From Mytilus trossulus (Eukaryota), in the NCBI RefSeq assembly GCF_036588685.1, contig NC_086379.1, positions 14,384,001-14,448,000 on the forward strand: a stretch of 64,000 nucleotides of DNA, written 5' to 3'. The notes under the pieces were generated by a model. The model worked only from the letters and a program-made list of their open reading frames with translations, did not search any database and was not told the origin of the DNA. This document shows, in pieces, positions 810-52,202 of this stretch. The position numbers and the translations under genes were made by a program. Numbering within the stretch: the first letter of the stretch is position 1; each line of letters begins with the position of its first letter.

Positions 810-1532
810 GATAACGGGGGGGGGGGGGCGGCGAGAGTTAGAATCCCCCTTTTTATAATAGAAACATATGACTGGGATAAAAAAAATGTTACTTTCAGCA
901 AAGGAGTAATTGAAGGATTTTTTTAATTTATAATAAATGCTTAATTTTTTTTCTCTATTGGAATTTCCTTAAATGTTTTTTTTTTTATATCTTGAAACAA
1001 TTTGTAGTGAACACTGTAAGTAATTTCTTGTGTTCATGCTATTTAAAGAATATTTCTATTGTTACGAATAACAATGGACTTTGTTTGCGGGATGTAGAAG
1101 CAGGGGTTTCCAGAAACCCCGCTTGTCACAGCCTGTGGTCAAAATCCATTGTTATTCGTAACAATAGATCTATTCAATTTACACGTGTTTCAAAAATAGA
1201 AACTATGAACTATAACAATAGAGCTGGGGTGTAACCCTTATTAATTAGTGTCAAATTACATAAAAGAAGTAAATTTCTATAAATTATTTTATAACCTAAT
1301 TAGTACATCAAAGTTCCTATCAATTTCATAATTTATCAACCGTAACATTTACAAGAAGTTTTAACACCTGTGACAAATATCGATCTTTGTTACCGGTATT
1401 CTAAGGATTAACTGCATCAGTAATTAATACATCAGAGGTCATTCAGGTAACAAAAAAAAATTAACTATAACAATAGACACTTATTTGATTTAATAACAAT
1501 AAAGAAACTCACTTATAATTATATATTTTTTA

Positions 1533-3809: not shown

Positions 3810-3911
3810 CTCATTCTTTTGATTTGGATCTAAATTTGATGTTTCGAGTAACAGTTTGACTGTTTCGAGTTCTCCAGTTCTAGCAGCTATGTGTAAAACA
3901 GTGTTTCCATT
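3810..3911 (-). CDS. Ankyrin repeat exon NGNTVLHIAARTGELETVKLLLETSNLDPNQKNE
   Basis: 102 nt, tttcag/GTATAA; last exon confidently found. Confidence 0.88.
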
Positions 3912-6900
3912 CTGAAAAAATAACAGTTGAAATATTTACAGTTCTTCCAAATATTCTGCTAAAAACAAAAAAAAACAGATTGAATACATACAATTAATAG
4001 TACACACCGTTTTTAATATGTAAGTTACGTGTAAACGTTAATTTTGTCAACAACTTGTTGATCGAGTCTGAATAAATTTGATTTCGCCTTACTCAAAATA
4101 ATTGAATACTTATTTATTTATTTATTTTTTTTAATATAAAACATATTTTATTAACAATCGCCTGTTACATCAACCCTCAGTTGCCCAGGGGAGCATTTGT
4201 CGGGGAAATACCAAATGAGAAAAAAAACTCCCACGATAAATTATTAACATCAACCTTTAAACATATTATCTATCCTTGTACAAATGTACATGTACCTGCA
4301 ATCATTATCGATCCATATATCTTTACCTCTCACCATATATAATTTTTTCAGTAAAGTATGTATCTTTATTTATTTCTCACAAAAACTACCTGTATTTATT
4401 AAGCAGTTTTTAATGTTACGGTACATCAAGTCTTTGGTTATGTTAATTTCAATTACATTTAAATTCTGGTCATGTTATCACGTGCGATTTGTTGAAGGGA
4501 TGTGTTACAGTAGTTCATTCATAAAAAAATGGATTATTTAATGATTTTTGATTTCCAAAAAGGTTTTATTTCAAAGATATGGTGAGTAAATATTTGTTTA
4601 TAAAATGAACCTGTTGATACAACATGTCTTGTTACAATTAGATGATATACCTGAATTACATACACAATAGAAATGACATGTAGGGAGTTGAGAGCAGTGT
4701 AAATATTATTATTCAATCAGTATCAAAGAGATCATAGCACTGACCTGACCACACAAAATGTATATGTATATACAAAAAATGTTACACATAAAAGAAAAGG
4801 CTTCGTTTTTCGTATTCGGTTAAAAAATATTTGAGCAAAAATTGCATTTCTTGTTCTATGTAGTAACTTCCATTGAAGTTGTTTAGTTTTCCTGTTAGCT
4901 AAATTCTTATTCAAGGTTTCCCAAATGTATTCCCAGGGTAGCTTATTCCCAAAATGTAAATTCCACTTAAACTGGCTTTTTGGAGCTGTTTTATTCTCAT
5001 AGAAGTTTCTAATATTTTTTTGGCACCAACGACAACTCCATTTTTTATAAATTGACAAGAATTTATTATTTTTATAGGTCTATCAGAGTGACTTTGCATG
5101 CTAGAGTCTGTTTTTAAAACGTCAATTTGTTGAGGTGTTAACGAAGATTTAATGCGGCTATATTGTGCTATCCAATTTCTTTTATCCATCAGACGGTTAA
5201 AAATATCAAAAGAAGTTTTAAAGGATTTATTGTTTAAGTCACATATATCTTTCTTTTTTTTTATTCCACTGGAGGCAAAATTTGCATAATATAATGCATG
5301 TCCCTTGAACTTAAATTTAAAATTGCCGAATATATATTTTCTTCTAAAAGGTCCTCTTTTGTGACCGATGTTTGGATTTTCTGTAAGTCAGACCAGGAAA
5401 TTAAAAGTTCTTTATAATATTTGGACATTTGTTTTTGCCTAAAACATGAAGTGTCCGAACAAGAACACATAAAAAAATCTGTATCATATTTTTCGTCTAG
5501 TGACGTCAACCAGTATTTTCCTATTGCATTCCATTTTTGTGTTATTGAGTTGACAATACTGTACATACTTTTCACCTGTTTTGATTTAATAAAGTCCCTT
5601 AAGTTTATCATTCCTATCCCCCCTTTTTCTTTCGGTAAACAGCACACTGTTCTAGCGATTTGGTTTGTTTTCCAATCCCATATAAAGGACCATATAATAT
5701 TATTTATTTGTTTTTCGAATATGTCCGGGATACCTCTAATTTCAATTTCGTATCCAATGACAGACAGTACAAAGGATTTAATAATTAAGACTTTTCCCGT
5801 AAAAGTGAGATCTCTTGATTTCCAAACTTCCATACAGCTTTTTATCTTATTTATTTTTTCTAACCAAATTTGATCTAAGTCCACCCCGTATCCATGTTGT
5901 ACCCCTAATGCTTTAACAGGACGCTTAGACCATTTAATTTTGTTAAATTTTGGTTTTTTATTTCACCACTTGCCTAAATACATGCCAACAGTCTTATCCA
6001 TATTCATTTTAGCCCCGAAGCGTTTTCGTACAGTTTTAAAGTTTTAAATGTTTCTTCGATAGACTCCTCACTTTTATTAAAGAGTTGAGTATCGTCAGCA
6101 AACATATTTAGCTTAGTTTCAATATAGTCCCCAGTTCTAGTAGGAAGTTTTATTCCTTCTATATTAGGATTGTTTCTAATTGAAGCTGCAAGTGGTTCTG
6201 CTTGCAGGATATATAACACCGGGGCTATTGGGCATCATTGACGAATTGAACGGGTTATCTTATATACTTATTTTTCTTCAAAGAACAGCCTTTGCCCCAA
6301 AGCAACTGAATTACACACTGTGGATGGCTTTGAATTCCATGTGAATTTTGCACGTCAATTTTCTTTGAGATTTTAAGATTTATTTTGGGGTTTTGTTTGT
6401 TGCGAGTGGGTACTTAAATGTCAAGTACGTCTAAGAATTGTTTAAGTTGACTATGTAACGATTGACAACCCTCTTGTGTGGTACAATCTATACCTTGTAT
6501 ATTTTTTTAGGGTCTATTGTTGTTCTTTCTAATAACAGTCTAACTGTTTTTAATTTTTCTACTTCTGCAGCTGTATCAAATGGAGTGTCCCCATCCTAAA
6601 ACAGAAATGCAACGATGTTCAGAGAACTAAAAGAAAAGGAAGAAACATTAACTAATCTTATCTGAATAATGTTATTTTGAAACAAGTCATTTGTATTGAT
6701 TTTAATTTTGAGCTTAAGTGAACAAACATGGTCATGGTGACGTGTTTTCATTTCTCATCTATATTGACAAAGATTGCCAGTTCCCCAACAAAAGGTTGGT
6801 GGTTCTCTTAGTTTACTTCAGCTCTCTCCACCAATTGATACTGTCACTAAACTTGATATTAAACATATTATTCGTCAATAAACCAATGAACCAACAAAGC

Positions 6901-27900: not shown

Positions 27901-30900
27901 CATCAAGGTTTCCCATTTTCAGACTTTATCACATATTAGGTAGTTGTATATACATACGTTCATGAATGATAAGTACACACTATACTTATATATAACAATA
28001 AATATATCAAACACAATTTATAGTTGCCGATCGCCCACAAGACTAGAAGGACACCGGATTTTATTATAATCTATCATAACAAACATAATATTTATGCAAA
28101 TAATTTCTATATACATATATATAAACAATGCTTTCGATATGAAATGAAAACATTGACTCCGTCGAACCCGCCGGCCAGGAAAAAACAACAACCAAGTTAC
28201 CTTAGTCGATATGGAAACCTGTGTCCAAACCCTAATGCTCGGAAGATCGTCTCGAGAGTTGTACTTGGACAATACTGAAAGTTAGGTTATAGATATAGGA
28301 AGATGTGGTGTGAGTGCTAATGAGACAACTCTCCATCCACATAACAATTTAAAAATTAAACCATTATAGGTTAAAGTACGGCCTTCAACACGGAGCCTTG
28401 GCTCACAACGAACAACAAGCTATAAGGGGCCCCAAAATAACTAGTGTAAAACCATTCAAACGGGAAAACCAACGGTCTAATCTATATAAACAAAACGAGA
28501 AACGAGAAACACGTATATATTACATAAACAAACGACAACTACTGTACATCAGATTCCTGACTTAGGACAGGTGCAAACATTTGCAGCGGGATTAAACGTT
28601 TTAATGGATCCAAACCTTCTCCCTTTTTCTGAAACAATAGCATAACATCACAACATAGAAAAACATACGATAAAATATCAATTGGCAGACTTAACTCAAT
28701 CAAAAAACGTAATATGCTTACATAAACAAATACCATCAAAATGTGTAATAGCAAACATAAATACCAATATATAGTACACAAACAAGAAAAAATCAAACAT
28801 TAATGAACCAACATAAAATCTGAACTTGACCAGTTCGAAGTTGGCGAGAGAATGGTCTGATAGGAAAATAAACCCGCCAAAATGACCATTCACGTGATAC
28901 TACAATTAATATCACGTGTCCATACATATATTGAAAGAACCTAATATCACGTGTCCATACATATATTGAAAGAACCGTTAGTACAATAATTTTTACTCTA
29001 TACTTCGAAACGCGGAAAATTATAAATCCTTGTCTTAATTTATCTGTACAATTGGAATGCAATATAAGCCTAAACTAAGAAAACGAATCTTAATTGATTG
29101 AGGGTCTTTGATTCTTATAAAATCAAAATTATTTGGGTTTAAGTATGCCTTGGCATTTCGAATATTTTGATTACGTAACGCATTTTGCATTCTGAAGATT
29201 TAAGTATTTATAAGAGATGTGTATAGAATTTATAATCAACATTATGTTGACATTGATTTTGATAAAAGATGCAACAAAGTTTAACAAGTATATACAAAAT
29301 GTCAATTCGTACCTTATTTTCCACATTTGGATCTATATCTGCTCTTTCTAATAACAATTGAACTATGTCAAGATTTCCACAACTAGAAGCTGCGTGTAAG
29401 GGAGTATTACCATTAAACTAAAAAAAAAAGCATCATATGAAAGCTATCAAAAACAATTCATACACATGTATAGCAGTTCACAATTGCATTTGCCATTATT
29501 TCGGGACGTTAATGAATTTCAAACTTTTTTGATTATCGCAATTTTGTTAAAACTGTTGATGTGTTTTATGTAAATTATTTGTGTACATAGTACATTTCTA
29601 TTGTGATGTGTAATCGTATCCAGTTTGCATTGTCAAAGGTTGCCTTTTTTCTCAAAAGCTCAGTTGTTTTGGGTGTTTATTTTTCCATCCACCACCAACA
29701 AAACCTGATCGCATTAGTATGACCATTAATGTCCGTTGCGTCAACCTCAACATACAAATACATAACAATATCATGGTTAGTTGTAGTATACAAATAGTTT
29801 GATTACGGGCAGATTTTAAAAAAAGAGGTTACAATAAATGCAATCGAAATAGGAAAAGACATAATTAAATTTGTCAAAATTATATAACACAAACAGACAG
29901 GCTGGTTACATCTACGTCATTTGTGACGTAGTTGAAAGTTGTTTCGTAAGTCCCAGCTCATGCCAGTGCAGTGCATGCATATAGTGTTTATGCCTGTTCT
30001 ATTTTACTTTTATTTTTTTGTGTGACTATATGATTTGTACAATCTTATTATTCATTTGTGCTATGTATTAAGTGTACTCTGCTTTTCACTTAAAAATGTC
30101 ATTAATGGTATCTGCATTGTGTGTTGTTATTAAGTCGATTTGAAAAGCTGTGTTTATGTTGTTTATTGAATATCGACTCTAAATAAAACTATGAATCTTG
30201 AATCTTGAATCAAGATCTTGAATCGTAAGCAATCATATCACATTTCCTTGTTTTAATATGTAGCAGGATATGTGTAATTTAAACATAATGTTTCTTTCTT
30301 TTTATTGGATATCTCAAACGATTTAGCAATTATACTACTTGACTAATATATTCATACCGTATCCTGTTTTGGGGGTTGTGTATTCTTATAAAATATTATC
30401 AGTTTTATAGAAATATTTTACAAAGTTTTACTACCCGGTAAAGAACGTCATCCCATACCCCATTGCCTTTATTCGGATCTATATCTGCTCTGTTTAATAA
30501 CAATTTATCTATGTCAAGATGTCCACAACTAGTAGCTGCGTGTAAGGGAGTATCATCATACTGAAATAAAAAGTTTACAATGTTCGTATTATCATACAGA
30601 CGTATAAAACAAACTATGTCATACAAATGAAAAAAATACAAAAAAAGATTGGCCAACAATTCGAGATAGATGAATTTCAAAACTGTTTTTCTTAATCGTG
30701 TTTTTCTTAAAACTGTTAATAAATAGTGTATCCGAATCACATTTAATTTGACATTAAGTTGATTGATCTGTTGGTGTACTCCATTGTCACCCAAAAACAC
30801 AAACTGAAAAAAGCTTTAAACTCCAATAAATCAAATACACCAACAATATCATGGTAAGTTGTCTTGGCTCTTAGTATAACAGTTGGTTTCATTACTGGCA

Positions 30901-33900
30901 GATTTCAGAAAAGAGGTCTCAGTCCAGGCAATCGAAATAAAAGAGAGACGAAAGATACCAGAGGGACAGTCAAACTCAGAGATTGGATATAAACTGACAA
31001 AGCCATGGCTAAAAAACCAACAGACACATGAAAGAACACAATACACACATCTTGGGTGAATTTAGATGCTTCGGAAGGGTATGATGAGTCTGCTCCACGT
31101 GTTACATCCGTCGTGTTACTCATGTTATTACAAACCCGGTAAAAATTCTCTTTCGGTAGGTCAAATTCTTGAAGAGGGAATGAGATTGTATTTACGACGT
31201 AAGGAAAATATCAGATGTCCTCTGTGAAACGGTTATTCTATAACGATGGCGACACTTAAATTTACGAATGGATGATTGCATTTTTTAACTCTTGGTTTAT
31301 AGCTTTCTTGTGTGCCAGAAATAGTGATCGGGCGTACAAGCCTGGGGAAGATCGTATCAACTGGGAGACATATATTCCGTTTGCAATCGCTGATGTAATA
31401 TTGCTGCATAAAAATGGACAAGTATTAATTGGGAAGCTGAAATCATCTCATTTGTCGTTTCAACCGACCCTCATTGTCAATTTCTAGAAGTATGTGAAGA
31501 TATGAGGCTGACTGAGCTGTATCCTGGTATCCTGTTTTTTTTTCCTTATTTAATGAGATAGATGCGTTCAACAAAGTTACCAAATTCTGAATTATTTAGT
31601 GAGACAACTTATCTATATATTCGAAAGTAAAGTTCATGCATATTGCTAACATATTATCTAAAGAAATGCAAACACCTATTGGATTTTTAAAATGGAAATC
31701 ACTAGAAGACACCAATCTAGCATATGAAACATTAAAATTTATTTTGACATTTTTAGATGATAATAGATATAAAATATTTAAATGAAAAAATACTTCATCA
31801 TATACTACCCTGTAATCAATTATTAAAACAATGGCGTTGAGTACAAACAGATACCTGCTTACACTGTTAACAAATAGAGAATTATGAACACTTCTTCCAC
31901 AAATGTTCATATTTTGAATTACTATGGCGAGTACAACAAATTCTTAAGAAATTAAATATTGGAAGATATGTTATTAATCTAAAACATAGCTTTGGAATAT
32001 AACATGCATGATAAAGAGCACTATGAACTAAATTTACTTTTAACTATTATCAGTTACACAATATATCAAGTATACTACTATATGTCTGACAAAAAAATAA
32101 GTTATACAACCATTCAAAATATTAAAACAAGATATCAGAACTTTTATTGAAATAAGAAACGTTTTAGAATATACAATTGGCAGACCATTATAGCAATTTA
32201 ATAAACTGAATGTCTGACTAGGACCCTATGAATGATGGCTGGAAAATAATAATATCTCAACCAAAAACAGAGAATATACTGTAATTTTCTTTAAACATTG
32301 TATTACCACCTGTTTATGTATATACATGTAAATATTTAAAATATTGACATTATACTATAATTTTCTTCAAACACTGTAGGTATAAGTACCAGTTTATGTT
32401 TACATATAAATAATAGTGTTTATCAATTGTGAATTGCGATTTGACTGTATTTATATACAACAGTCAACAGTTGTTTTATATATGTTATGTTTTCATGATT
32501 ATTATTTGAACTATATATTATTCGTCTATGTTTGTTGTTGTCCACTAAATAAATGTTTTTTTTACTAGCTTAACGTTATTCAAGATATAAGAATCTAGTA
32601 TGACATTAGAACACTCAGAAAACGAAAATTACCTTCAACTGAATAAGTTGATAAAATAGCATCCGATTTTACTAATTCGATATTTTGTAAAACACATATT
32701 TGCATTTCAAACGAATATTCACAACAGAAAAAGATAACGGCATATCAATAATCCTTTCAAAACAAAAATTTTGGAAAAATTTCGTTGAATAATGCACTAA
32801 TGTTTATTCCATATAATTACTGCACATGAGGACGGGATAAGGTACCGGTATTTGATGGTTCTATTAACAAATGTGAGTATGTTAATAAAACTTAGGTTAA
32901 AAAAGAAAGAAAGAAATACTTATCTTTCTTCCTTAGAAGTTCCTGTATGAAGTCAGTCTCATAATAATAAAGAAACAAGTAGGCAAGAAGAGATTGGTTT
33001 GTTGAAAAATACGTCCAAATATGTTGTCAAGTAAGAAATCAAGCATCTTGATAATGTAAGTATCAGAATTGTTCTTTGTTTATTTGAATCAGACTGATTC
33101 TTTACAAAGTAGGATTTATCCCTTCCTACAACAAGATATTTGATTACTTTTCTAGAAAACCAAACAAAGCCAACTCTTTCAAAATTCTTAGATTGTACGT
33201 ACTCTTAAAGATTTTGGAATTTATTGATATCCCCATCGAATTCACGCCATCTCTAGAAAAGGAAGTTTCACAATAACTTTGAAGCCCGGCTTTGAATGCT
33301 GATAGAATATTTGTTAATGAATTTTGATTTGTATCAACGACCTCAAAGCCTTACTGTATTCGGAAAGAATATATTTGCACGTTTAGCCAATTCCCTGGCA
33401 TAATCCTCGATTGAATTCATCAGTATTTTGAAGATGTATTTCAAATTGATAGATTAAGGCTCACGATACTAAGGACCGTTGGATAAAACATTGTGCAGGG
33501 AGCTGTTAATAACAATGTTGATGTCAACGGTGGCCAGCCGGATTTTATATGAATTGCGAACTAGCATAGGTGCAATAGGAGGTTGAGATTTGTCGTCAAT
33601 ATTGAATTTCTGAAAAATGTGTTTGTAATTGGAAATATTAGTTGCAGTTGGTTTGGTATAGGTATAAGAAATGATTGGTACAGACTGATCTTTACAATAA
33701 GGAGGTATTTTCGACTAAACCTATTTATGATGACAGTTATTGCCTAAGTTATCGTCATCGAGACCTTTGTTGGGAAAGGAAAGTTTATGAATTGTTCATG
33801 AATTTGTTCATAAGGATTAAGATAATAACTTCTGTACTTAAAACATGTTCATGGTGATATTTTCAATTGATAAAGATTGCTAGTTTTCCAGAAAGTCGGT

Positions 33901-36900
33901 TGTTCTATCTATTTCCTCCAGGTTCATCCACCAACAAAAACTAACCACCATGGTATTTGCAATCTCATTGAACAAATATTTTTACTCCAACAAACAAATA
34001 CACTAACAATATCGTGGAAAGTTGTATCATGCTTATAGTATAAAAGTTAGTAGCATTACGGACAGACTTTAAGAAAGAGATCTCAGGCAAGGCATAAATT
34101 AAAAACTGATACGAAAAGCTGTCAAAAGTAGATAGATAGATAGATGCTGTATTCCCTGTAAATTAATACAAGTTATAACTTTACAGAGTACCTAAGGATG
34201 TATGGATTTGTTTCCAGATATATCAGGATAGTTTAATATCATTGTTCTTGCTAGCAAATAACCAGCAATATAATTGTAAGTTATATAACACTTATAGTAT
34301 AACAGTTGGTTTCATTACGGGCAGATTTTTAGCTAGCAAATAACCAGCAATATAATTGTAGGTTGTATAGCACTCATAGAATAACAATTTTTTTTAATTT
34401 TGCCTACGTTCTGAAATTTGATTTGGGGTGATGGCTGTAGCTAAACATTATAGTATAGTATCCTCTGAACTATATATTTTATGTTAACAACGTAACTAGG
34501 AATGGTCACGGTGCCTTTATATTAGTCAAACAGAGCAGCAGGCATAATTCATTATAAGAATTGAAACCATATATTAACACCACATATCTTTTTTCTCTTA
34601 ACAGACTTTACCATGTATTGTGTAGACATTCAAATTCAAGTTCTTTTAGTAAAATCGATTCGTCACAACAATACACTCTATTAAATGAAAAGACCATATC
34701 ACCGTCGGATACAATATGTTACATTAAATTACTCAGAATGAAATACACACAACTATCTGTATACCTTATCACCAACAAATACAGAAGCTACCTTTTTTCT
34801 GGACCTTTAACCAAATGGTTGAAACCTAATCAATACGCATTAAAACATCGGTTTGAAGAATAAGGTTGTTATGTACCTGAATATATGTATAGAAAAAGAG
34901 TATATGTGGTAACTTGAACCCAACCTAAGTGTGGTATTCAATATGTGGGACAGACGGGACGAGAGTATTTCAGAAGAAATCAAGAACATCTGTACCGCTT
35001 TCGTAGACCCAAAAAATTCAAAAGTTTAATATATCAGCATTTAGATAAGCATAATCATAATCTGAAATATATAAAATTCCAACCGCTCGAAACCGTTCAA
35101 AAACAACCAGGAGAATCACACAAGCAATTTGAAAAATCACGCGAAGTTCGCGAATTGTTTTGGATAAAAAGACTTCAAACAGCTTATCCTCTCGGTCTAA
35201 ATGATAAAATATTAGGGCAGGGGAACATATCTAAAACTCATATCGATGTCATTAATATTGTTGATAAACGACTTAGAAATAATAGATCTCATGGTAAACG
35301 CAAGAACCGCAATCAACGTATTAAACATCGTAAAAATTATACACTTGCTGATCTGTTATCTATAATAAAGAATAATGGCAGACATCAAGTATTATGCAAA
35401 CTGGGTCAGATACCTATAAGTAAATTATATGCTATTTTTCTTGAGTGTGATAAAATTTCTTTTTTTAGCCCATTTTAAGAATACACCCGTATTATTACAG
35501 CCTTTTGTCATCACAGGCTTTTTCCTATTATTGATAAACCTGAAAATCGTAAACGACATTTTCTCAAATTAAAATATATAAATAGAGGTATTGATTTTAT
35601 TAATTTGTCTAGCATATTCAATGACTCTTCTGTCTATAGCTTAATACCTCCATATTTTGATAATATAGAACAACCCATTATTTCGTATTCTTATAAAAAA
35701 CCGAGCAGAAATTTGATTTTCAATTATACGTCAATTACAACAGACGTCAATATAGAAAATAATGTTCCTTCCACTTGAGATTGCGAAACATCTAGTTTTA
35801 AATATGTTCCCTATGGTCATGTTATCACAGGAGACCTCAACATAGTCGATGACCGTGAAGTCATAACTTTTCTAAAGAAATGACCGAAATACCGTCCTCC
35901 ATCTACAATAGATTGGAAACAGTGTCGTCAGGTCATTAAAGACGCTCTGTCTGCCTATTGTAAAAATTGGTGCAAACGTGAAAAATCCGATAAAAAATCT
36001 TTAGACAGTTATTTGAATAAAATTATGAATACTGTTGATATTCGAATATCTCATTTAGAAAACAATTCTGAAATAAATAATAGGAACCATGATATACCCA
36101 TTTCTAGAATAAAAAACAAACTCAAGGTACTCGCAGAGCGGTTTGTGTTCGTACCGGCAGACAAGGCATCAAATAATGTAGTGGTGGTGTGACGCATATA
36201 CTACACGAAAGTTCTTCAAAACGAAATTATCAATTCCTCTACATTCAGGTCAGTGCGCACCATAGAGAGTCAAATCGTTAACAAGCATACCACTGCAACT
36301 GCCCAGCTTAAAGCATCTTCCGAACATTTGAAAGTCCCTACCATGTACTGGTTACCGAAATTACACAAAAAACCATTTAAATTCCGTTTCATCTCCGCTT
36401 CGAGTAAGTGTTCTACTACTAATCTATCAGTGTTTCTAACCACCTCCCTTACTACTATCAAAGAACTGGTTATTAACTTTTGTAATAAAGCTTATGAAAA
36501 TAATGGTATTAATTATTTTTGGAGTGTTAAAAATTCTTTAGAGGTTTTAGATAAAATACATGCTTTCAATGGTCCTTACAATTCTGTTGACAGTTATGAT
36601 TTTTCTACTCTGTACACTACACTTCCACACAATCTTATAAAGAAAAAGTTTTTGTATTTGATAAAATGGTCTTTCGAAAATTCTCATTGTGATTTTATTT
36701 GCTGTAACTCGTTTAAGGCCTTTTTCTGTAACGAAAAAGGAAAGTATGCTAGATACACTTACTGGAAATGTGAGGATATGATTAAAGCTTTAAACTTTCT
36801 GCTTGATAACATTTATGTACGTTTCGGCGATAAAGTGTATCGTCAGGTAGTAGGTATTCCTATGGGCACCAACTGTGCCCCTTTAATAGCAGATTTATTT

Positions 36901-39900
36901 CTATATTGCTATGAATCTCAGTTTATGACCAAACTCAGTAAAGACCCATCATTGTTACATTTGGTTGATACATTCAAAAATACCTACCGTTATCTGGATG
37001 ATATTTTTTCGTTGAATAATCCAGAGTTCTCTAAATATACTTCAGAAATTTACCCAAACGAACTTACTTTAACTAAATCTAACATAAACAGCAGCAGTTG
37101 TCCTTTTCTAGATTTAGACATTTCAATTTCAAACGGGAAACTTCACACTAAAATTTACGACAAAAGAGACGATTTTTCATTTCCTATTGTTAATTTTCCT
37201 TTTTTAGACGGCGATGTGCCTTTGGCTCCATCATACGGTGTTTATATATCGCAACTCGTTCGGTTTGCCCGTGTGTGTTCTGATGTCATAGATTTTAACG
37301 AACGTAATCAATGCATCACTGGTAAATTGTTGTGTCAGGGATTTCGATACCATAAATTACTTAAAACTTTTACTAAATTCTTTCATAGATACAAAGATTT
37401 GATTAGTAAATTTGGCTATACCTGTAGAAAGCTTATTAAAAATGGTATTTCTCATCCTAAATTTTATGGTAATATTGTACTTAAAGCGAGGAAATCACTA
37501 TGTGATCCTTGTAAACTCATCGAACCTTTAAACAAACTTATAAGTAAGGGTTATCGTACCAATATTGTAATTAGATCTCTGAATATAGTTCACATTGGCA
37601 CTAATATTGATTTTGTCATTAGCAAATTAAAACATAACTAAATTTCATTATCTTTTGAGGCGAGATGTATAGGGGACACAGCCACGTTAACTTTTATTTC
37701 TATAGAAGTAGCTCTTCACTATACTACTACCTATCGATACATTTATTTTTGGCATTGCACAAGTCATGTCTTCTTTGACTATTAATGACGTTAAAATACT
37801 AAATCCCTGTGATGTGTTTTAGTCGATTTTAGTCTCTGATGCATGATTTTTACTATTAATTGGTTTTGGCTTTTAACTAGCTGTCAGTAACTGCGAGTAC
37901 TCTCAAATCGTATTTTCTTGTTAATTCGACCTGTTGATACTGTTTATAATGCTTTTTTGTCATTTTTTATTTATATGTATCTTGCTTGTATACCAGCTTT
38001 GATTATTTGTAATATCTTCAATTTTTCACTTATTCTTACAACATTTGTATAAACTTCAAGATTATAAAAAAACGGTTTTTTTCTAAAGTGAACATTGATT
38101 GGTTAAATATTTCTCAGTGTGTTTGAATTTGTTTGTAAGCCTTTTGGTCATGAATGTTTGTCTCTAATATTTAATTAACTGTGCATTTGTATTCAGATAT
38201 CGCAGATCAAATTTATTCGTTCATTGTGTAATCATACGTTTTTTGATTGAGTTAAGTCTGCCAATTGATATTTTATCGTATGTTTTTATATGTTGTGATG
38301 TTATGCTAATGTTTCAGAAAAAGGGAGAAGGTTTGGGCCCATTAAAACGTTTAATCCCGCTGCAAATGTTTGCACCTGTCCTAAGTCAGGAATCTGATGT
38401 ACAGTAGTTGTCGTTTGTTTATGTAATATATACGTGTTTCTCGTTTCTCGTTTTGTTTATATAGATCAGACCGTTGGTTTTCCCGTTTGAATGGTTTTAC
38501 ACTAGTAATTTTGGGGCCTTTATAGCTTGTTGTTCGGTGTGAGCCAAGGCTCCGTGTTGAAGGCCGTACTTTAACCTATAATGGTTTAATTTTTTAATTG
38601 TTATTTGGATGGAGAGTTGTCTCATTGGCACTCACACCACATCTTCCTATATCTATAGAAACAATATCCAACTTAAAGGTAAATACAAAAAACAGAAAGG
38701 TCATACAAATTCAAACGCAATCAACCAACGGAACAAGTTAAAAATAAAATATTCTATTCCTGACTTGGTACAGGCATTTTCTAAAGAAAATGATAGGTTA
38801 ACTTAAGTTTTACGGCTGGCAAAACATCTTTATTGTATGTTGTTAACAGTTTCATTAAATTGACAAATTGATTGAGTATTCCAGACATTTATATTTTGTT
38901 AATGTGCAAATTGTTGTGACCCAGCATGACTGAGTAAACTTACATCACTGACATATAAAACTGACTGAAAATTCAAACAAACATAGAAATATATCTAACA
39001 ACGATGTGAACAAAAAGATTGCTGTAGTTGATAGTAAAATTGACTAAGAAAAATACAAAAGCATTATGGTTATTGAGGAGAACCCTGTAAAATCCAAATC
39101 CTGCATTTCAGATTTGATTTTGAGAGGTAAAGAGTTAGCTAGGTCAAAATATTGATTTTTGGAAAAATAGTGAAAAATAAAATCAATTGTCTTGCTATTC
39201 TGAATTTTAGTAAAATCTTGCTCTAAACCATTCCCTCTCGCAAGCGGCTATTGCTAGTTATGGCTATTAGTACTTTAAATAACCATTTGATACCAAACAA
39301 ATTTTTTTTTTTAAACAACGAACATTATAGCGATATGCTTCTGTTGTATTAATAAGTCAAATTTTGGGAAGAATGAAGAATAATACTATTTTATCAATTG
39401 CTTGTAATTGTGTTATTGTTCAATACAATTTAGCTGGTTCCCTAAGTTGTTTGTGTTAAAATTCTCACCCAGTCGCTATAGTTTATATCTGCGCCTTTGG
39501 AAAGCCAATCTTTAACCTTTTGTAAATCCCCGTTTTCAGCTGCTTTACAGAGAACCTGGAGGAAAGCATATATTCCATTGAACAAGTATTCTCTATTAGG
39601 AATATTTGTTTGTACAATAGTATCAATTATTATAACTCAGAATGCTTTTTCTATATAAAAAGTAATGAAATAGTTGTGCTATATCATTCCACAGAACCAT
39701 TTGCCAGTCAATAGTTTCAAAGCCTATTGCCCCGGGAAATAGTTTCATAATCATCTTTCCCGTACTTTTTCATGCTTAAATTTCATTGAACGATAATGAT
39801 GTCATTGACTACTCTGCTTGGCTACGTATGCTTTGCAACGTCAAACTCACTCTTATATTGTAAACGTTGGAATCTGTTTGTGTTGATTGTAATTTAACTT

Positions 39901-40925
39901 TCAAGAAGCAATTATAAGAAAGAAAAAAAATCTTCACGGGAATTTTATAAAGATCTAGAATATAGTACCTTATTCATAATATTGGTTCGCTCTCCGTATA
40001 TTAAAAGTAAATTTGCGTTTGGTGTACTTTAGCTTGAATTAAATATAAGAACGGAAAGCTTAACACTTGTTCAATATAATAAAACACCTAATGACTGGTT
40101 GTGCGGGTAATATCAAGTTTGTTGTCCTTTTTGCATACCAACTATTGCTCTTGGCTTTGCCCGGAGCAATAGTTGGTACCTCAGGGACAACAAACTGTCT
40201 ATTATCCTAACAACCCGACATAGGAGCGTAAAACAACTGAATGCAATGTGTCTTCAATACAGTGAGAAAATTCCCCACCCGGAGGCGTGGTTCTTCTGAC
40301 CCCTAAACAAAAATGTGTACTAGTTCAGTGATAATAGACGTCATACTAAACTTCGAAATAAATAAAAGAAACTATAAAAATTATAATCATACAAGACTAA
40401 CAATGGTCAGAGCCTCCTGACTTGGGACAGGCGCAACAATGCGTTGGGGTTAAACATGTTTTTGATATCGCAACTCTCCTATACCACAAGCAAATGTAAA
40501 AAAACAACCGCGCACAGCAATACGCACAGTTAAGATCAGTTTAAAAGAAGACCAAGTTCGATGTCAAAATACTTGAATAACGTTTGTTTTCATAAACAGC
40601 TGATTTTAGGTGTCATTTAATACAAAGTCAGATTAGACCGATCTATCGTATTAAGAAAAATAATGCGTATTGTAGGATTTGTGTTATCACATAAATAACA
40701 TATAAATTTATGACAATCTTTAAGCTAGAAAAGAGATAATTTTAACAAGTGTAAAAACTCCATTTAATTGAATTAAAACTGATGTCACGTCAAAACCTGA
40801 ATTCGGAATACGATATATCTGAATTTTATTTCAAATTAGAAATGATCACGCTCTAAAACAAATACGAATTAGATTGGTGTCATTTTTGTAAAACTTACAT
40901 CATGTCCCTGCTGCCAACTTTCCAT
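3810..40925 (-). CDS. Multi-exon ankyrin-repeat protein gene (ATG exon, N-cap exon, 11 single-repeat exons); 3' end unresolved
   Basis: 13 coding exons each bounded by AG/GT on the minus strand with phase-0 junctions. They splice into MESWQQGHD-VLCKAAENGDLQKVKDWLSKGADINYSDW followed by repeats of the G-x-T/N-x-LH-x-A...G...LL...DP-x-x-x-N ankyrin pattern. Confidence 0.88.
4123..6263 (-). mobile_element. 5'-truncated, decayed L1/Tx1-type LINE (RT C-terminal half and A-rich tail)
   Basis: ITRSIRQ*CPIAP, MFADDTQLF, YENASGLK, WKSRDLTFTGKVLIIKS, LPKEKGGIGMINL, LQWKLLHR across several frames; A-rich tail near 4110-4150. Confidence 0.88.
6494..6595 (-). CDS. Divergent ankyrin repeat exon DGDTPFDTAAEVEKLKTVRLLLERTTIDPKKIYK
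   Basis: 102 nt, ttttag/GTATAG; TPFD replaces TPLH. Confidence 0.8.
9156..9257 (-). CDS. Ankyrin repeat exon NGDTLLHSACRGGDPTILQLLLERTMIDPKSVNK
   Basis: 102 nt, tttcag/GTATTG; lies inside ORF 9111..9350. Confidence 0.9.
11661..13490 (+). mobile_element. Head-to-tail dimer of a Helentron-associated (HINE/DINE-like) non-autonomous element
   Basis: Units start at 11661 and 12533 (872-bp period). 5' palindrome CAATTGTTC-aga-GAACAATTG plus GGTCTTTCCAC; internal TGACCTTGACCT subrepeats; 3' hairpin GGTCTTTCCAC-n6-GTGGAAAGACC present twice. Confidence 0.7.
14735..14960 (-). repeat. Third copy of the tRNA-derived unit
   Basis: Reverse complement of the 62.9-63.15 kb unit, including B box GGTTCGAATTCC and the (TA)n end. 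Confidence 0.7.
17144..17245 (-). CDS. Ankyrin repeat exon DNDTLLHSAVRDGHLHILQWLLERTKIDPNIVNK
   Basis: 102 nt, ttgcag/GTATTG; lies inside ORF 17108..17476. Confidence 0.9.
18143..18244 (-). CDS. Ankyrin repeat exon DGDNLLHSAVRGGLLNILQWLLERTKIDPKEENK
   Basis: 102 nt, ttccag/GTATTG. Confidence 0.9.
19158..19259 (-). CDS. Ankyrin repeat exon DGDTLLHLAVRDGRIIILQWLLQRTKIDPYSVNK
   Basis: 102 nt, ttacag/GTATTG. Confidence 0.9.
20258..20359 (-). CDS. Ankyrin repeat exon DGDNILHSAVRGDHLIILQWLLERTKIDPKSLNK
   Basis: 102 nt, ttccag/GTATTG. Confidence 0.9.
21267..21368 (-). CDS. Ankyrin repeat exon DGDNILHSAVRGGHLNILQWLLERTKIDPKSVNK
   Basis: 102 nt, ttccag/GTATTG; same peptide as the 22246 exon with two synonymous differences. 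Confidence 0.9.
22246..22347 (-). CDS. Ankyrin repeat exon DGDNILHSAVRGGHLNILQWLLERTKIDPKSVNK
   Basis: 102 nt, ttccag/GTATTG. Confidence 0.9.
22918..23198 (-). pseudogene. Destroyed ankyrin exon (donor deleted, split by a hammerhead-family repeat)
   Basis: Acceptor and DGDT codons at 23187-23198; the remainder of the exon at about 22920-23001; insert of about 185 bp between them. The caatacctta donor segment found in sister units is missing. Confidence 0.85.
23002..23186 (-). mobile_element. Hammerhead-family repeat fragment inserted in an ankyrin exon
   Basis: Motif at 23047-23089 reads CGUCA-CUGAUGU-GUCU...AGAC-GAAA-CGCGCG-UC-UGGCG, with one core substitution. Confidence 0.85.
24736..27031. 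mobile_element. Non-autonomous TIR DNA transposon with TTAA TSD (Kolobok-like termini)
   Basis: TTAA|GGGAATACGATACAGTAG ... CTACTGTATCGTATGCCC|TTAA; TIRs match at 17 of 18 positions. Confidence 0.8.
27130..27579 (+). repeat. Dispersed repeat, probably the 3' end of another retroelement family (also 3058-3372 minus and about 8708-8960 plus)
   Basis: Three aligned copies share aagtcaggaatatgacagtt...gtccattc, and two share the end ttcagtatttttgtgattttact. The AAGTCAGGAAT motif also occurs in the Naiad 3' UTR. Confidence 0.65.
28289..28711 (-). mobile_element. 3'-terminal fragment of the Naiad-type element
   Basis: Near-identical reverse complement of about 38235-38657. Confidence 0.9.
29313..29417 (-). 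CDS. Ankyrin repeat exon FNGNTPLHAASSCGNLDIVQLLLERADIDPNVENK
   Basis: 105 nt, poly-T-ag acceptor and GTACGA donor, TPLH motif; one codon longer than its paralogues. Confidence 0.82.
30459..30560 (-). CDS. Ankyrin repeat exon YDDTPLHAATSCGHLDIDKLLLNRADIDPNKGNG
   Basis: 102 nt, tttcag/GTATGG, TPLH motif. Confidence 0.9.
30940..31290 (-). repeat. Dispersed repeat (related piece at about 46763-46930)
   Basis: Shared cagagggacagt.aaactca...gccatg.ctaaaaaa block. Confidence 0.5.
34900..37641 (+). pseudogene. EN-RT polyprotein frame, predicted selenoprotein (3 Sec TGA codons); this copy inactivated by 2 nonsense changes
   Basis: 913 codons with no frameshift. TGA at 34915, 35776 and 36190 (expected Cys positions); TAA at 35476; TGA at 35881 (expected Gly of KGPKYR). 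Confidence 0.8.
37777..37834 (+). promoter_or_regulatory. Eukaryotic SECIS element (type II)
   Basis: Helix I GACTA/TAGTC; core ATGAC (37785-37789) and CGAT (37824-37827); 10-bp helix II GTTAAAATAC/GTGTTTTAGT; apical AA plus ATC/GAT mini-stem. Starts 136 nt after the ORF stop. Confidence 0.85.
39469..39555 (-). CDS. Ankyrin N-capping exon VLCKAAENGDLQKVKDWLSKGADINYSDW
   Basis: 87 nt, acceptor tcctccag, donor GTGAGA. The L-x-x-AA-x-x-G-DL-x-x-V-x-x-x-L-x-x-GADIN pattern is typical of a first ankyrin repeat. Confidence 0.88.
40899..40925 (-). CDS. Ankyrin gene start-codon exon, coding part MESWQQGHD (whole exon 40899-40932)
   Basis: Acceptor ttttacag, then ATAGACG-ATG, donor GTAAGT. An in-frame TAG two codons upstream supports this ATG as the start. 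Phase 0 joins the N-cap exon. Confidence 0.72.
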
Positions 40926-41394
40926 CGTCTATCTGTAAAATAAACATACACATTAATTATGTGTGCTAAATCGTTTCAGAAAACTGTTTTGATGGCAAAC
41001 ATAAAAACATTTTTTATTTGTCAATCAAGATACATTGAGTAGCAAACCAATTACAATTTAATCAAAGTATACAAATAATTGAAGAATAAAATCATTTTAA
41101 AACACTCTATAACATTTATAGGTATTAATTCATTGAACAATGCCAGGTTTTTCCTTATTTTATTTGATATTGTATTCTGAATCTATGATTAAGCAAAAAT
41201 TCTGTTGTTGAATTAAAATTTTCAAATAATGTTTAGTGTTACTCAATCAGTTGTCGCTTCATTTGTTAAACTCTTCAGTGGATGTTATTTTTTCTGATAG
41301 TCTGACCCTAAATAAAGACGTATTTAGTATAACTTAAAGGGTATATCGCAGGTCACTGCTCGGTTAGTCAATTTTCTATGTGTCTATAGAGAAT

Positions 41395-41426
<32 letters not shown>

Positions 41427-41861
41427 TTACTTTTTGATAACTTTACATGTACTGATCTCGAAAAACAAATATTCCCTTTTGTAACTTATTTTTAGAGAAT
41501 TGTCCCTAAATCTCTAAGCCAACAAATAAAATTTGCTTCAATATGAAGACGTATTTTAACATTAACAAATAAGTCATACAAGATACCAGACAAATGTTAG
41601 TACATACTCGTCTTTGGTGCTTGCATCAAAACAATTAAAAGTTTCGGTCAACTAGAAAGTTAAGCCGTAGTGAAATCCTCTAGTATCAAATAAGATGAAT
41701 GCCGAATTATGACTTGAAGTAAAACAAAAAGGTATTTCGATTTATGTTTCACATATTTGAACATACATTTTACAACACGTTTGATACATCACTATTTGTA
41801 AAATATCAACATACAACCTAGGTGGTTTTCGTGAAAAGGCAATCGACGATTATTAATACTG

Positions 41862-43000
41862 GGTAAATAAACTCAACATAATTACCAGGATTGCATTTTA
41901 TTATATCTACGCCAGACGCGTGTTTTGTCTACAATAGATTCTTCACACGAATAAAAGAAAAATGCTAAAAAAGACCAAATAAAGTAAGAATTTGAAGATT
42001 ATGAAGACTAAAAAGCCCTAAAGGTTTTGTCAAATACAGCTAGTCTATTCCTGAGGTAGACAGGGGCACTGACGGGCATATATGAATAAAGACGATCCAG
42101 TGATTCCATAAACAGTCTTGAGGAAACGATGATAGTCCGTCGGAAAGGGACGATAAATGGCTGACCCGTGTTAAGAGAGAGCCACATCTCTGCACGTTAA
42201 AGACACCCTTGTAGATTTCGAAAAAGAGTAGGCTAATGCCGCTACAAGGCAGCACTCGCACCCGCAAAGTGGAAAGGGATTAATATAAGTTGCAAAACTT
42301 GTTTCCCAATCCACTATAAATAAATATGTTTAAAACTAAACAATCTGGTAGGGAAGCCTTGGTATTTTAAACTTTCAAAGTTTTGTTAAAAGTTATCAAA
42401 GGTACCAGGATTATAATTTAATACGCCAGACGCGCGTTTCCATTACGTGAAACTCATCAGGGACGCTCAGAACCAAAATTCTTAAAACAATATACCAAAT
42501 ACTGATAAGTTAATTTATTACTGGGATTTATAAAAATCACCATATAATTGATATTCATGTCAAGACCGAATTGCTGACTAATGGGCTAGTGATACCCTCG
42601 GGGACGAAACGTTCACCAGCAAGGGCATCGACACAGTAGTGTAAAAGGTTATTAAAGGTACCAGAATGATAACTTAATACGCCAGATGCGCGTTTCGTCT
42701 ACTTCAGACTCATCATCAATAAAGTCTAAAGCCAAACAAGTACAAAGTTGAAGACCATCGAGGACTCAAAATTCCAAACGTTGTAAACAGTTAATTTAGT
42801 ATTATGACTATATCAATGATAATTATGTGAGCTCAGAAGTGCTGACTACTGAATATACTGGATATACTATCGGGGAATAAAACTACAACAGCAGTAGCAT
42901 CGATTCAAAGGTTGTAAATAAACTCATAATACATACCAGGATTGCAATTTTATATTTACGCCAGACATGATTTTCGAATACAAAAGACACATCATAAATG
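41862..43000 (-). repeat. Decayed tandem array of a second hammerhead repeat family (4 motifs)
   Basis: tacgccagacgcgcgtttcgtct...gactcatcag motif at 41908, 42422, 42678 and 42957. Minus-strand consensus CGUCA-CUGAUGA-GUCU...AGAC-GAAA-C(GCGC)G-UC-UGGCG. Confidence 0.8.
42061..42345 (+). mobile_element. 5'-truncated SINE fragment resembling the Deu/Nin domain, nested in the hammerhead array
   Basis: gggacgataaa...gacccgtg...gcacgttaaagacaccc...ttcgaaaaagagtagg resembles the Deu-domain core (from memory); A-rich tail; interrupts a hammerhead repeat unit. Confidence 0.55.
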
Positions 43001-51384: not shown

Positions 51385-52202
51385 TGTAGCGGATCACATC
51401 ATTCAGGCAGGCATCAAATTATAATAAGACGATAACTCAAGTATGCGGTATAAATATGTATCTTTTATTCCTCAAAATTACACTTAATTTTGGCTTCTTA
51501 TACTCATATATTATATCAACCGATTCTCTACAATAGAATACAAATACAAATAATAGATATAGGAAGATGTGGTGTGAGTGCCAATGAGACAACTCTCCAT
51601 CCAAATAACAATTTAAAAATTAAACCATTATAGGTTAAAGTACGGCCTTCAACACGGAGCCTTGGCTCACATCGAACAACAAGCTATAAAGGGCCCCAAA
51701 ATTACTAGTGTAAAACCATTCAAACGGGAAAACCAACGGTTATCGTAAGTAAAAATATAACTTAAAGCACTACAGGCATAATACTAAACAAACAATAGGA
51801 AACACTTTCTTTCACGCTTAATGAATAACTTGTTAAAGTAAAAAGTTAATTGAAATAAATATACTTTTACAATTCTTAATATTTCTTCTTTAAATAAATA
51901 TTGTTCTTAAAAATGTACATAAATTATTTCTTACCGATTATGATCTCTCTATAAATAACGATGTGTCTCCGTAATCAAATAATTTGTAATGAATAAAAAC
52001 TATAGACAACGTAACGTACGTAAAAGGCTAAACGTCATAAAACTTTAAAAACGGGAAATATAGCAATTCATAAGAGCGCAACGTTACATGTATGCGCAAA
52101 TACCCAAAAATCGTATCTACAAGTATTACAAATAAAATAAATAACTTCAGTAATAATTAATGAAGTAACCCAACAATTTGGAATTACATTTCAAATCTAA
52201 CA
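51385..52202 (-). repeat. 3' LTR (818 bp, including an insertion of about 190 bp)
   Basis: Matches the 5' LTR by eye except at about 51549-51741. Confidence 0.95.
51549..51741 (-). mobile_element. Naiad 3'-end fragment inserted in the 3' LTR
   Basis: Reverse complement of about 38470-38657; replaces about 11 bp (cataagcatac) present in the 5' LTR. Confidence 0.9.

What the first reader, a model, noticed from the sequence alone, without database searches (positions are those of the whole stretch)
34900..37641. Selenoprotein-encoding Penelope-like retrotransposon: three TGA codons sit at expected cysteines
Seen: the two ORFs (34945..35478, 36253..37641) and the gap between them are one frame with no frameshift over 913 codons. 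Three in-frame TGAs fall in Cys contexts: VYVVT-TGA-TQPKC-GIQYVG (first C of the endonuclease CCHH set, 34915), PST-TGA-DC (the linker CxC read as UxC, 35776) and ADKASNNVVVV-TGA-RIYY (start of RT, 36190). Known: the Naiad clade of Penelope-like elements has GIY-YIG N-terminal to RT with a CxC linker, and Sec-encoding Naiads have been reported from spiders and clams. Inference: this family is a multi-Sec selenoprotein whose RT can only be translated through Sec recoding, which would make transposition depend on selenium supply. I do not know whether this particular family has been described. This copy is probably dead (TAA at 35476, TGA at 35881 for Gly, 5' truncation).
Basis: partly seen in the sequence, partly recalled or inferred. 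Interest (0 to 1): 0.9.

Follow-up and report, generated by a model that had tools for sequence, protein, structure and literature searches.

The report
Dead copy of selenocysteine-coding Naiad retrotransposon
This stretch is a broken, 5'-truncated copy of a very young Penelope-like (Naiad) retrotransposon whose endonuclease-reverse transcriptase gene carries UGA codons exactly where relatives have invariant cysteines, so it joins the selenoprotein-coding transposons first described in 2021, with five such codons where the published families have three or four.

Summary
Window 34901-38656 (+) is one 5'-truncated copy of a 4445-bp Naiad Penelope-like element. Its single frame carries TGA at 34915, 35776 and 36190.

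- **Copies:** among 38 genomic copies about 99% alike, these TGAs are present in 29/30, 32/32 and 36/36. The window's TAA at 35476 and TGA at 35881 are private; the others read TAT and GGA.
- **Genome-wide 27-mers:** 69, 113 and 177 copies carry TGA at the three sites. None carries TGT or TGC.
- **Full-length copies:** they add two more TGAs, five in all. All five fall on columns that are Cys in 25/26 to 44/44 full-length homologues.
- **SECIS:** a SECIS-like hairpin lies at 37777-37834, 135 nt after the TAA stop. It scores 28.4 bits, below Rfam's cut-off of 35.
- **Host:** the genome has two tRNA-Sec genes.
- **Selection:** variants shared between copies show purifying selection on the RT part downstream of all the TGAs (p=0.0002), but not detectably on the endonuclease part.

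The kind is already known (Craig et al. 2021, three or four UGAs, clams and spiders). This is a new, richer member. The scan had already found this family elsewhere in this genome (s1-820507, s1-820123). Sec insertion itself is inferred, not shown.

The parts
34901..38656 (+). 5'-truncated copy of the Naiad element. It covers unit positions 688-4445 of a 4445-bp unit.
   Evidence: blastn against 29 other copies at 98-99% identity; all homology starts at 34901 and ends at 38655-38657
34901..35181 (+). GIY-YIG endonuclease domain; its first two residues are lost to the truncation.
   Evidence: Aligns to the Pfam GIY-YIG stretches of homologues P0020 (32.9 bits) and P0023 (38.3 bits), which map to ORF residues 87-182
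34915..34917 (+). TGA at the first Cys of the CCHH motif inside the GIY-YIG core.
   Evidence: TGA in 29/30 copies. Genome-wide 69 TGA and 0 other. Cys in 34/34 homologues
35476..35478 (+). Private nonsense mutation TAA in this copy.
   Evidence: 30 other copies read TAT, Tyr
35776..35778 (+). TGA at the first Cys of the CxC linker motif, read as UxC.
   Evidence: TGA in 32/32 copies. Genome-wide 113 TGA, 1 TGG, 0 TGY. Cys in 43/43 homologues
35881..35883 (+). Private nonsense mutation TGA in this copy.
   Evidence: 31 other copies read GGA and 1 reads AGA
36160..36168 (+). DKA motif, diagnostic for Naiads.
   Evidence: Seen in the translation and in the alignment to homologues
36190..36192 (+). 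TGA eight residues after DKA.
   Evidence: TGA in 36/36 copies. Genome-wide 177 TGA, 1 TGG, 0 TGY. Cys in 44/44 homologues
36193..37638 (+). Reverse transcriptase part, 482 codons; the YLDD motif is at 36991-37002.
   Evidence: phmmer finds 10835 proteins at E<=1e-10. Pfam RVT_1 is weak at 15.7 bits. Shared versus singleton N/S gives p=0.0002
37639..37641 (+). True stop codon, TAA.
   Evidence: TAA in 38/38 copies
37777..37834 (+). SECIS-like hairpin with an AUGA ... AAA ... GAU core.
   Evidence: Rfam SECIS_1 28.4 bits, E 0.038, below the gathering score of 35. Fold z-score -3.7. Identical in 31/38 copies. Its 28-mer occurs 586 times in the genome
37642..38656 (+). 3'UTR and the part that forms the pseudo-LTR.
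   Evidence: In full-length copies this stretch recurs immediately upstream as a partial tandem copy
28289..28711 (-). Separate 423-bp 3'-end fragment of the same family.
   Evidence: blastn, 97.9% identity to unit positions 4023-4445
51553..51740 (-). Separate 188-bp 3'-end fragment of the same family.
   Evidence: blastn, 99.5% identity to unit positions 4258-4445

Best explanation
Window 34901-38656 is a dead, 5'-truncated insertion of a very young Naiad-clade Penelope-like retrotransposon. The full unit is 4445 bp. It has a 5'UTR of about 420 nt, one ORF of 1001 codons and a 3'UTR of about 1 kb. The ORF runs N-terminal GIY-YIG endonuclease, KR-rich and CxC linker, then reverse transcriptase.

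In the family's intact copies the ORF is interrupted only by five UGA codons. Each sits on a cysteine that is invariant in relatives: the second Cys of CX4CxxC, the Cys just before GIY-YIG, the first Cys of CCHH, the first Cys of the CxC linker, and the Cys eight residues after DKA.

Inferred mechanism: the SECIS-like hairpin in the 3'UTR recruits the host Sec machinery, and all five UGAs are read as selenocysteine. The full endonuclease-RT protein is a multi-Sec selenoprotein, with Sec replacing metal-binding or redox cysteines. The element then copies itself by target-primed reverse transcription, leaving 5'-truncated copies and partial tandems.

Shown here: the anatomy, the fixation of TGA, the Cys correspondence, host tRNA-Sec genes, and selection on the RT part. 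Inferred: Sec insertion, SECIS function, and dependence on selenium.
For: - **Fixation in sampled copies.** The five TGA sites read TGA in 27/28, 29/29, 29/30, 32/32 and 36/36 of 38 distinct copies. The window's other two stops are private.
- **Genome-wide counts.** Exact 27-mers at the three window sites give 69, 113 and 177 copies with TGA, two with TGG, and none with TGT or TGC.
- **Cys correspondence.** All five TGA columns are Cys in 25/26, 32/33, 34/34, 43/43 and 44/44 full-length homologues.
- **No other stops.** Five of the 9 conserved Cys columns that the element has are TGA, and the family state has no other stop in 1001 codons at 33% GC.
- **SECIS.** There is a SECIS_1 match on the right strand 135 nt after the stop, with the AUGA/AAA/GAU core. 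It is identical in 31/38 copies.
- **Second family.** A relative at about 63% amino-acid identity also has a SECIS_1 match of 27.4 bits, about 55 nt after its ORF end.
- **Host machinery.** The genome has two tRNA-Sec genes at 79.6 and 77 bits, with anticodon TCA.
- **Selection.** Variants shared by copies have N:S of 15:22 against 141:66 for singletons (p=0.0025). In the RT part the figures are 6:16 against 74:31 (p=0.0002).
- **Intact copies.** Nine of 20 sampled copies that reach the ATG have no stop other than the five TGAs and no frameshift.
- **Published pattern.** Three of the five sites are those reported for the clam Sec-Naiads (PMC8557442).
Against: - No direct evidence exists for Sec insertion.
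- The SECIS match is below Rfam's gathering score (28.4 against 35). The copies are too alike to show covariation.
- The endonuclease and linker part shows no detectable purifying selection: shared 9 N:6 S against singleton 67:35, p=0.77, with low power.
- Five successive UGAs demand efficient processive recoding.
- The same genome holds Cys-type Naiads with uninterrupted 1000-aa and 1056-aa frames, which could supply proteins in trans.
- One old, decayed relative has TGC at the DKA+8 site.
- The RNA evidence is only contigs from metatranscriptome libraries, which may contain DNA.
Confidence: 0.82

Rival explanations
1. The TGA-bearing family is a non-autonomous, protein-dead lineage. Its RNA is copied in trans by Cys-type Naiads of the same genome, and the TGAs are plain nonsense mutations carried along.
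For: The same genome has Naiad families with uninterrupted 1000-aa and 1056-aa frames. The endonuclease part shows no detectable selection.
Against: Five of five stops are TGA, and all lie on invariant Cys columns (P about 1e-11, or 5e-4 among Cys codons). No TAA or TAG occurs in 1001 codons of the family state. The RT part is under purifying selection among propagating lineages (p=0.0002). A SECIS-like hairpin is present, and a second one lies in a relative at 63% identity. Three of the sites match those of published Sec-Naiads.
Confidence: 0.07
2. Only an RT-only product is made from this RNA, by initiation at the first Met about 50 codons downstream of the last UGA. Alternatively the UGAs are leaked through by near-cognate tRNAs without Sec, so the element is not a selenoprotein gene.
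For: The selection signal is confined to the RT part downstream of all the TGAs. The SECIS score is below Rfam's cut-off.
Against: The DKA motif and the N-terminal RT region lie upstream of the last UGA and are kept in frame. Dispersed insertions on many chromosomes need an endonuclease. Leak-through at five UGAs in series would yield almost no full-length protein. The exclusive TGA-at-Cys pattern has no explanation under this reading.
Confidence: 0.07
3. The TGAs are assembly or sequencing errors, or mutations specific to this copy.
For: None found.
Against: The same TGAs occur in 69 to 177 independent genomic copies. They also occur in contigs of independent public runs: a contig of run X15 spans 36190 with all five of its differences elsewhere.
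Confidence: 0.01

Closest known systems
Naiad_Mmer and Naiad_Scon, the Sec-encoding Naiads of the clams Mercenaria mercenaria and Sinonovacula constricta (Craig et al. 2021, PMC8557442)
   Same: The architecture is the same: N-terminal GIY-YIG endonuclease, CxC linker, DKA motif and RT. UGA sits at the Cys before GIY-YIG, at the first Cys of CCHH and at DKA+8. A SECIS lies after a TAA/TAG stop. Copy number is high, with 5' truncation and partial tandems.
   Different: This family has five UGAs, against three or four. Its additional UGAs are at the first Cys of the CxC linker, a site not among those the paper lists for its four families, and at the second Cys of CX4CxxC, reported only for a spider family. 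It has no UGA in RT6(D). Its SECIS starts 135 nt after the stop, against 1-21 nt or overlapping.
Naiad_Sdum and Naiad_Smim, the Sec-encoding Naiads of Stegodyphus spiders (same paper)
   Same: UGA sits in the CX2-5CxxC motif, before GIY-YIG and at DKA+8. They are multi-Sec with a 3'UTR SECIS.
   Different: The spider families lack UGA in CCHH, and per the paper they lack the IFD. They are judged an independent origin. The runs that hold the present element carry marine labels.
Selenoprotein P (processive multi-UGA recoding; up to 132 UGAs in molluscs, Baclaocos et al. 2019 as cited in PMC8557442)
   Same: Several UGAs in one ORF are read with 3'UTR SECIS help. It shows that bivalve-type hosts can decode many UGAs in series.
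   Different: It is an unrelated host protein, and vertebrate SelP uses two SECIS elements. Only one SECIS-like hairpin was found here in 12 kb.

Membership tests
Naiad clade of Penelope-like elements | GIY-YIG endonuclease N-terminal to the RT (permuted order) | tested here: met
   ORF residues 87-182 align to the Pfam GIY-YIG stretches of homologues P0020 and P0023, which score over the cut-off. The RT follows at residues 520-1001. Pfam does not hit the window's own pieces, because the GIY part is cut by the TGA.
Naiad clade of Penelope-like elements | CCHH Zn-finger-like motif inside the GIY-YIG core | tested here: met
   The motif reads U-x4-C followed by His residues. The column of the first Cys is Cys in 34/34 homologues and that of the second in 33/34.
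Naiad clade of Penelope-like elements | CX2-5CxxC motif upstream of GIY-YIG | tested here: met
   It is present as C-x4-U-x2-C in full-length copies. It is missing from the window's copy because of the 5' truncation.
Naiad clade of Penelope-like elements | CxC linker motif between endonuclease and RT | tested here: met
   It is present as U-D-C at 35776-35784. The two columns are Cys in 43/43 and 41/43 homologues.
Naiad clade of Penelope-like elements | DKA in place of the DKG of other PLEs | tested here: met
   PADKA lies at 36154-36168 and is shared with the homologues.
Naiad clade of Penelope-like elements | PLE insertion anatomy: variable 5' truncation, partial tandems (pseudo-LTR), no poly(A) | tested here: met
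   The 38 copies start at many different unit positions. Ten of 13 copies that reach unit position 1 are preceded by a long stretch of the unit's 3' end, and the other three by a short remnant of it. All copies end at the same ...TATATCTA(T) without an A-tail.
Naiad clade of Penelope-like elements | No canonical hammerhead ribozyme in the element | tested here: met
   There was no hammerhead match in 30000-42000 at E<=5, nor in 11 loci at E<=1.
Naiad clade of Penelope-like elements | Insertion-in-fingers domain between RT3(A) and RT4(B); preference for (TA)n targets | tested here: inconclusive
   The IFD was not measured. The flanks of 38 copies are AT-rich but show no consistent (TA)n target or target-site duplication.
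Eukaryotic selenoprotein gene | In-frame UGA aligned with Cys (or Sec) in homologues | tested here: met
   All five sites align this way, at 25/26 to 44/44 Cys.
Eukaryotic selenoprotein gene | SECIS element in the 3'UTR | tested here: inconclusive
   SECIS_1 scores 28.4 bits against a gathering score of 35. The AUGA, unpaired AAA and GAU are in the right places, helix II has 10 pairs, and the fold z-score is -3.7. SECISearch3 was not available. There is no covariation among copies 99% alike.
Eukaryotic selenoprotein gene | Host has the Sec decoding machinery | tested here: met
   The genome has two tRNA-Sec genes at 79.6 and 77 bits, which ARAGORN calls SeC with anticodon TCA. The protein factors were not searched.
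Eukaryotic selenoprotein gene | Sec actually incorporated at UGA | not testable with these tools
   This needs 75Se labelling, mass spectrometry or ribosome profiling.

The most novel reading that the evidence does not exclude
This may be the most selenocysteine-rich transposon yet seen. It has five Sec codons, at least one in each cysteine motif of the endonuclease and linker, including a UxC linker site not among those listed for the four published families. It may still be active: copies are about 99% alike, and about half of the sampled full-length copies have unbroken frames. Its 5'-truncated insertions have scattered at least 586 identical SECIS cores over all chromosomes. That would make it a live source of SECIS elements for host genes, and a natural system in which selenium supply gates transposition.
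Probability: 0.3. Interest if true: 0.7.

Novelty: new member of a known kind. Interest (0 to 1): 0.45.

Why it matters
Selenoprotein-coding transposons are known from only four families (Craig et al. 2021). A fifth family with more Sec codons would be useful for three reasons:
- It has hundreds of near-identical copies and apparently unbroken members.
- It sits in a genome that also holds Cys-type Naiads, which allows a direct comparison of Sec with Cys in the same protein fold.
- It makes the selenium dependence of transposition testable, and likewise the spread of SECIS elements into host 3'UTRs.

For annotation, it shows again that gene finders split such elements at TGA. The closest database proteins begin just after the last TGA.

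The copy in this window is itself inert.

Tried and rejected
- **Pfam on the window's own stop-free pieces.** It gave only a weak RVT_1 hit (15.7 bits) and no GIY-YIG, because the TGAs cut the domains. The homologues settled the question.
- **Rfam over 11 whole loci.** It missed the family's SECIS, because the filters are stricter with more sequence. The hairpin is nevertheless identical there.
- **The fetch from genomes.** I used exact pattern counts instead.
- **The paper's supplementary sequences.** They are not held, so no direct comparison with Naiad_Mmer or Naiad_Scon was possible.
- **Searching with the Cys-type homologue P0003.** I hoped for stop tallies for the Sec family. It returned only other, Cys-type Naiad families.
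- **Laying RNA-library contigs.** The contigs show the element in three studies. They cannot prove transcription or show read-through.
- **Aligning the 3'UTRs of three related families.** The two SECIS hairpins did not fall into register, so no covariation test was possible.
- **No consensus built.** Polarity of variants was taken column by column inside scripts and never assembled or printed. No copy is singled out as intact.
Full report
**Observation**

Translating window 34840-37641 in one frame gives a continuous reading that ends at the TAA at 37639. It is interrupted only by TGA 34915, TAA 35476, TGA 35776, TGA 35881 and TGA 36190. The local contexts are as quoted: YVVT-TGA-TQPKC-GIQYVG, PST-TGA-DC and ADKASNNVVVV-TGA-RIYY.

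**Extent and family**

A DNA search of the window's own genome (1.30 Gb, 541 contigs) returned 29 further copies at 98-99% identity.

- Homology to the window begins at 34901 and ends at 38655-38657 in all of them, so the element here is 34901-38656.
- The other copies run further 5', to many different end points. Several are preceded head-to-tail by the last ~810 bp of another copy.
- The full unit is 4445 bp. One natural copy, L004:814-5258, served as the coordinate reference.
- The window's copy lacks unit positions 1-687.
- All copies end at the same ...TATATCTA(T) without an A-tail.
- Copies that reach unit position 1 start with TTACTGCAGG; ten of 13 are preceded by a long stretch of the unit's 3' end and three by a short remnant of it.

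This is the partial-tandem (pseudo-LTR) and 5'-truncation anatomy described for Penelope-like elements (PMC8557442). Two more 3'-end fragments of the family lie in the window, at 28289-28711 (-) and 51553-51740 (-).

**The ORF of full-length copies**

In the reference natural copy the frame runs from an ATG at unit position 423 to the TAA at 3426, which is 1001 codons. It contains five in-frame TGAs and no other stop:

- C-x4-TGA-x2-C;
- TGA just before the GIY-YIG core;
- TGA-x4-C inside the core (window 34915);
- TGA-x-C in the linker (window 35776);
- TGA eight residues after DKA (window 36190).

The window's copy therefore shows three of five.

**Are the TGAs fixed?**

I compared 38 distinct copies, 30 and 8 new ones.

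| Site | Reads TGA | Others |
|---|---|---|
| CX4-U-xxC | 27/28 | 1 TTA |
| Before GIY-YIG | 29/29 | none |
| First Cys of CCHH (34915) | 29/30 | 1 TCA |
| UxC linker (35776) | 32/32 | 1 copy has a gap |
| DKA+8 (36190) | 36/36 | none |

- The window's TAA at 35476 is private: 30 other copies read TAT.
- Its TGA at 35881 is private: 31 read GGA and 1 reads AGA.
- The terminal TAA is present in 38/38 copies.

Because the sample was chosen by similarity, I also counted exact 27-mers over the whole genome, with the third codon base left free or restricted.

| Site | TGA | Other | TGT or TGC |
|---|---|---|---|
| CCHH | 69 | 0 | 0 |
| UxC | 113 | 1 TGG | 0 |
| DKA+8 | 177 | 1 TGG | 0 |

The rise from 69 to 113 to 177, and then to 586 for the SECIS core, is the expected 5'-truncation gradient.

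**Do the TGA columns hold Cys in relatives?**

A full HMMER search with the 482-aa RT piece found 10835 proteins at E<=1e-10. I aligned the 46 hits of 800 aa or more with the reference copy's translation, with X at each TGA.

- The five X columns are Cys in 25/26, 32/33, 34/34, 43/43 and 44/44 of the sequences that cover them.
- The family alignment has ten conserved Cys columns. The element has nine of them, five as TGA and four as TGT or TGC.
- For five random codons out of 1001 to fall on those nine columns, P is about 1.5e-11. Restricted to the 33 Cys/TGA codons it is 5e-4.
- Homologues P0020 and P0023 carry Pfam GIY-YIG above the cut-off near their N-terminus. That stretch maps to ORF residues 87-182 of the element, window 34894-35181.
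- With the CCHH, CxC and DKA motifs, this places the element in the Naiad clade as defined in PMC8557442.

**SECIS and host machinery**

An Rfam scan of 30000-42000 at E<=5 gave one relevant match. It is SECIS_1 at 37777-37834 on the + strand, with 28.4 bits and E 0.038, below the gathering score of 35.

- It starts 135 nt after the TAA.
- It has a 5-bp lower helix, AUGA on the 5' side and GAU on the 3' side (U.U, G.A and A.G pairs possible), and a 10-pair upper helix.
- Unpaired AAA opens the apical loop.
- The fold is more stable than shuffles, with z -3.7.
- Whether it is form 1 or form 2 is open. The minimum-energy fold has a 14-nt loop, but a 3-bp mini-helix is possible.
- The 82-nt stretch around it is identical in 31 of 38 copies, so covariation cannot be tested within the family.

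There is independent support. The upstream flank of one locus holds the C-terminal end of a different Naiad, 63-77% identical at the amino-acid level. A second SECIS_1 match of 27.4 bits, with a quite different sequence, lies about 55 nt after that ORF's end on the same strand.

The genome has two tRNA-Sec genes at 79.6 and 77 bits (cut-off 47), with anticodon TCA.

**Selection**

Mutations private to one copy are mostly post-insertion and neutral. Variants shared by two or more copies arose mostly in lineages that went on transposing.

| Region | Singletons N:S | Shared N:S | Fisher p |
|---|---|---|---|
| Whole ORF | 141:66 | 15:22 | 0.0025 |
| RT part, after the last TGA | 74:31 | 6:16 | 0.0002 |
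| Endonuclease and linker part | 67:35 | 9:6 | 0.77 |

So the RT region, which lies behind all five UGAs, has been under purifying selection in the propagating lineages. For the endonuclease part the data have no power either way. Of 20 sampled copies that reach the ATG, nine have no frameshift and no stop other than the five TGAs. I do not name them.

**Expression**

Twenty public runs from 11 studies hold the element. Their labels are marine: seawater, macroalgae, and fish and invertebrate gut metagenomes. Contigs from four RNA libraries of three studies cover most of 34840-38856 at 95-100% identity. None lies on the unique 5' flank at 34701-34839. A 424-nt contig of run X15 spans 36190 with all five of its differences elsewhere, so it keeps that TGA. 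These are contigs from metatranscriptomes and may contain DNA, so this is not proof of transcription.

**Comparison with what is known**

Craig et al. 2021 (PMC8557442) described four Sec-encoding Naiads.

- The two clam families have 3 and 4 UGAs, and the two spider families have 3 and 4.
- All four have UGA at the Cys before GIY-YIG and at DKA+8.
- The clam families also have it at the first Cys of CCHH.
- The spider families have it in CX2-5CxxC.
- Their SECIS lies 1-21 nt after the stop, or overlaps it.

The present family shares the three clam sites. It adds the second Cys of CX4CxxC and the first Cys of the CxC linker, a site not among those the paper lists, giving five. Its SECIS is placed further downstream. 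A literature search found no later report of Sec-coding transposons.

It is therefore a new and richer member of a known kind. Whether the host is one of the published species I cannot tell. The UGA pattern differs from both published clam families.

The scan had already met this family on other DNA of this genome (s1-820507, s1-820123) and had noted the hairpin in this window (s1-826839). My counts agree with those notes.

**Rivals**

- **Trans-mobilisation.** The same genome holds Cys-type Naiads with uninterrupted 1000-aa and 1056-aa frames, so mobilisation of a dead lineage in trans is conceivable. It does not explain the exclusive TGA-at-Cys pattern, the absence of TAA or TAG, the SECIS, or the selection on the RT.
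- **RT-only product or leak-through.** An RT-only product from internal initiation, or near-cognate leak-through, is not excluded by the selection data. It leaves the same pattern unexplained.
- **One ambiguous relative.** An old, decayed relative at about 60% identity has TGC at DKA+8 and TAA at the UxC site. As one broken copy, it cannot say whether its family coded Cys or Sec.

**Verdict**

The window's copy is inert: it is 5'-truncated, lacks the ATG and two TGA sites, and has two private nonsense mutations. Sec insertion, SECIS function and selenium dependence remain inferences that need bench tests.

Noticed in passing
window 33379-33786 (-): A fragment of a distantly related Naiad-like ORF, 33% amino-acid identity over 140 residues around the linker region and carrying stops. 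It lies 1.1 kb upstream of the element on the opposite strand.
   Followed up: partly
window 38315-38731: In all four RNA-library runs, summed contig depth over the last ~350 nt of the element is 100-fold or more higher than over the ORF. This is far more than the 5'-truncation gradient in the genomic counts. A short derivative or another family may share this tail.
   Followed up: no
L008:508-572 (flank of another copy): A second SECIS_1 match of 27.4 bits lies about 55 nt after the ORF end of a different Naiad family, 63-77% identical at the amino-acid level. More than one SECIS-bearing Naiad family may live in this genome.
   Followed up: partly
L033:2063-3082: An old, decayed Naiad relative at about 60% amino-acid identity, with frameshifts and stops. 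It has TGC (Cys) at the DKA+8 site and TAA at the UxC site.
   Followed up: partly
G000 C10 63.84-63.86 Mb and 64.46-64.49 Mb; L033:610-691 and 1501-1583: Two tandem arrays, 49 units in all with periods of 891 and 900 bp, hold tRNA-like genes that score 45.9 bits on the tRNA-Sec model, just under its cut-off. In L033 ARAGORN calls a tRNA-Ser (GCT) and an 83-nt tRNA with a Cys anticodon (GCA). These are long-arm Ser-type tRNAs, not tRNA-Sec.
   Followed up: partly
G000, 46 places listed: Cys-type Naiad families with uninterrupted frames of 1000 aa and 1056 aa, some as adjacent tandem pairs, coexist with the Sec-type family.
   Followed up: no
table (G000, many places): About half of the 95 RT-region matches have an open frame of 480 aa rather than 482 aa. 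This suggests a second subfamily with a two-codon difference that is bounded upstream at the same place. It could not be fetched.
   Followed up: no
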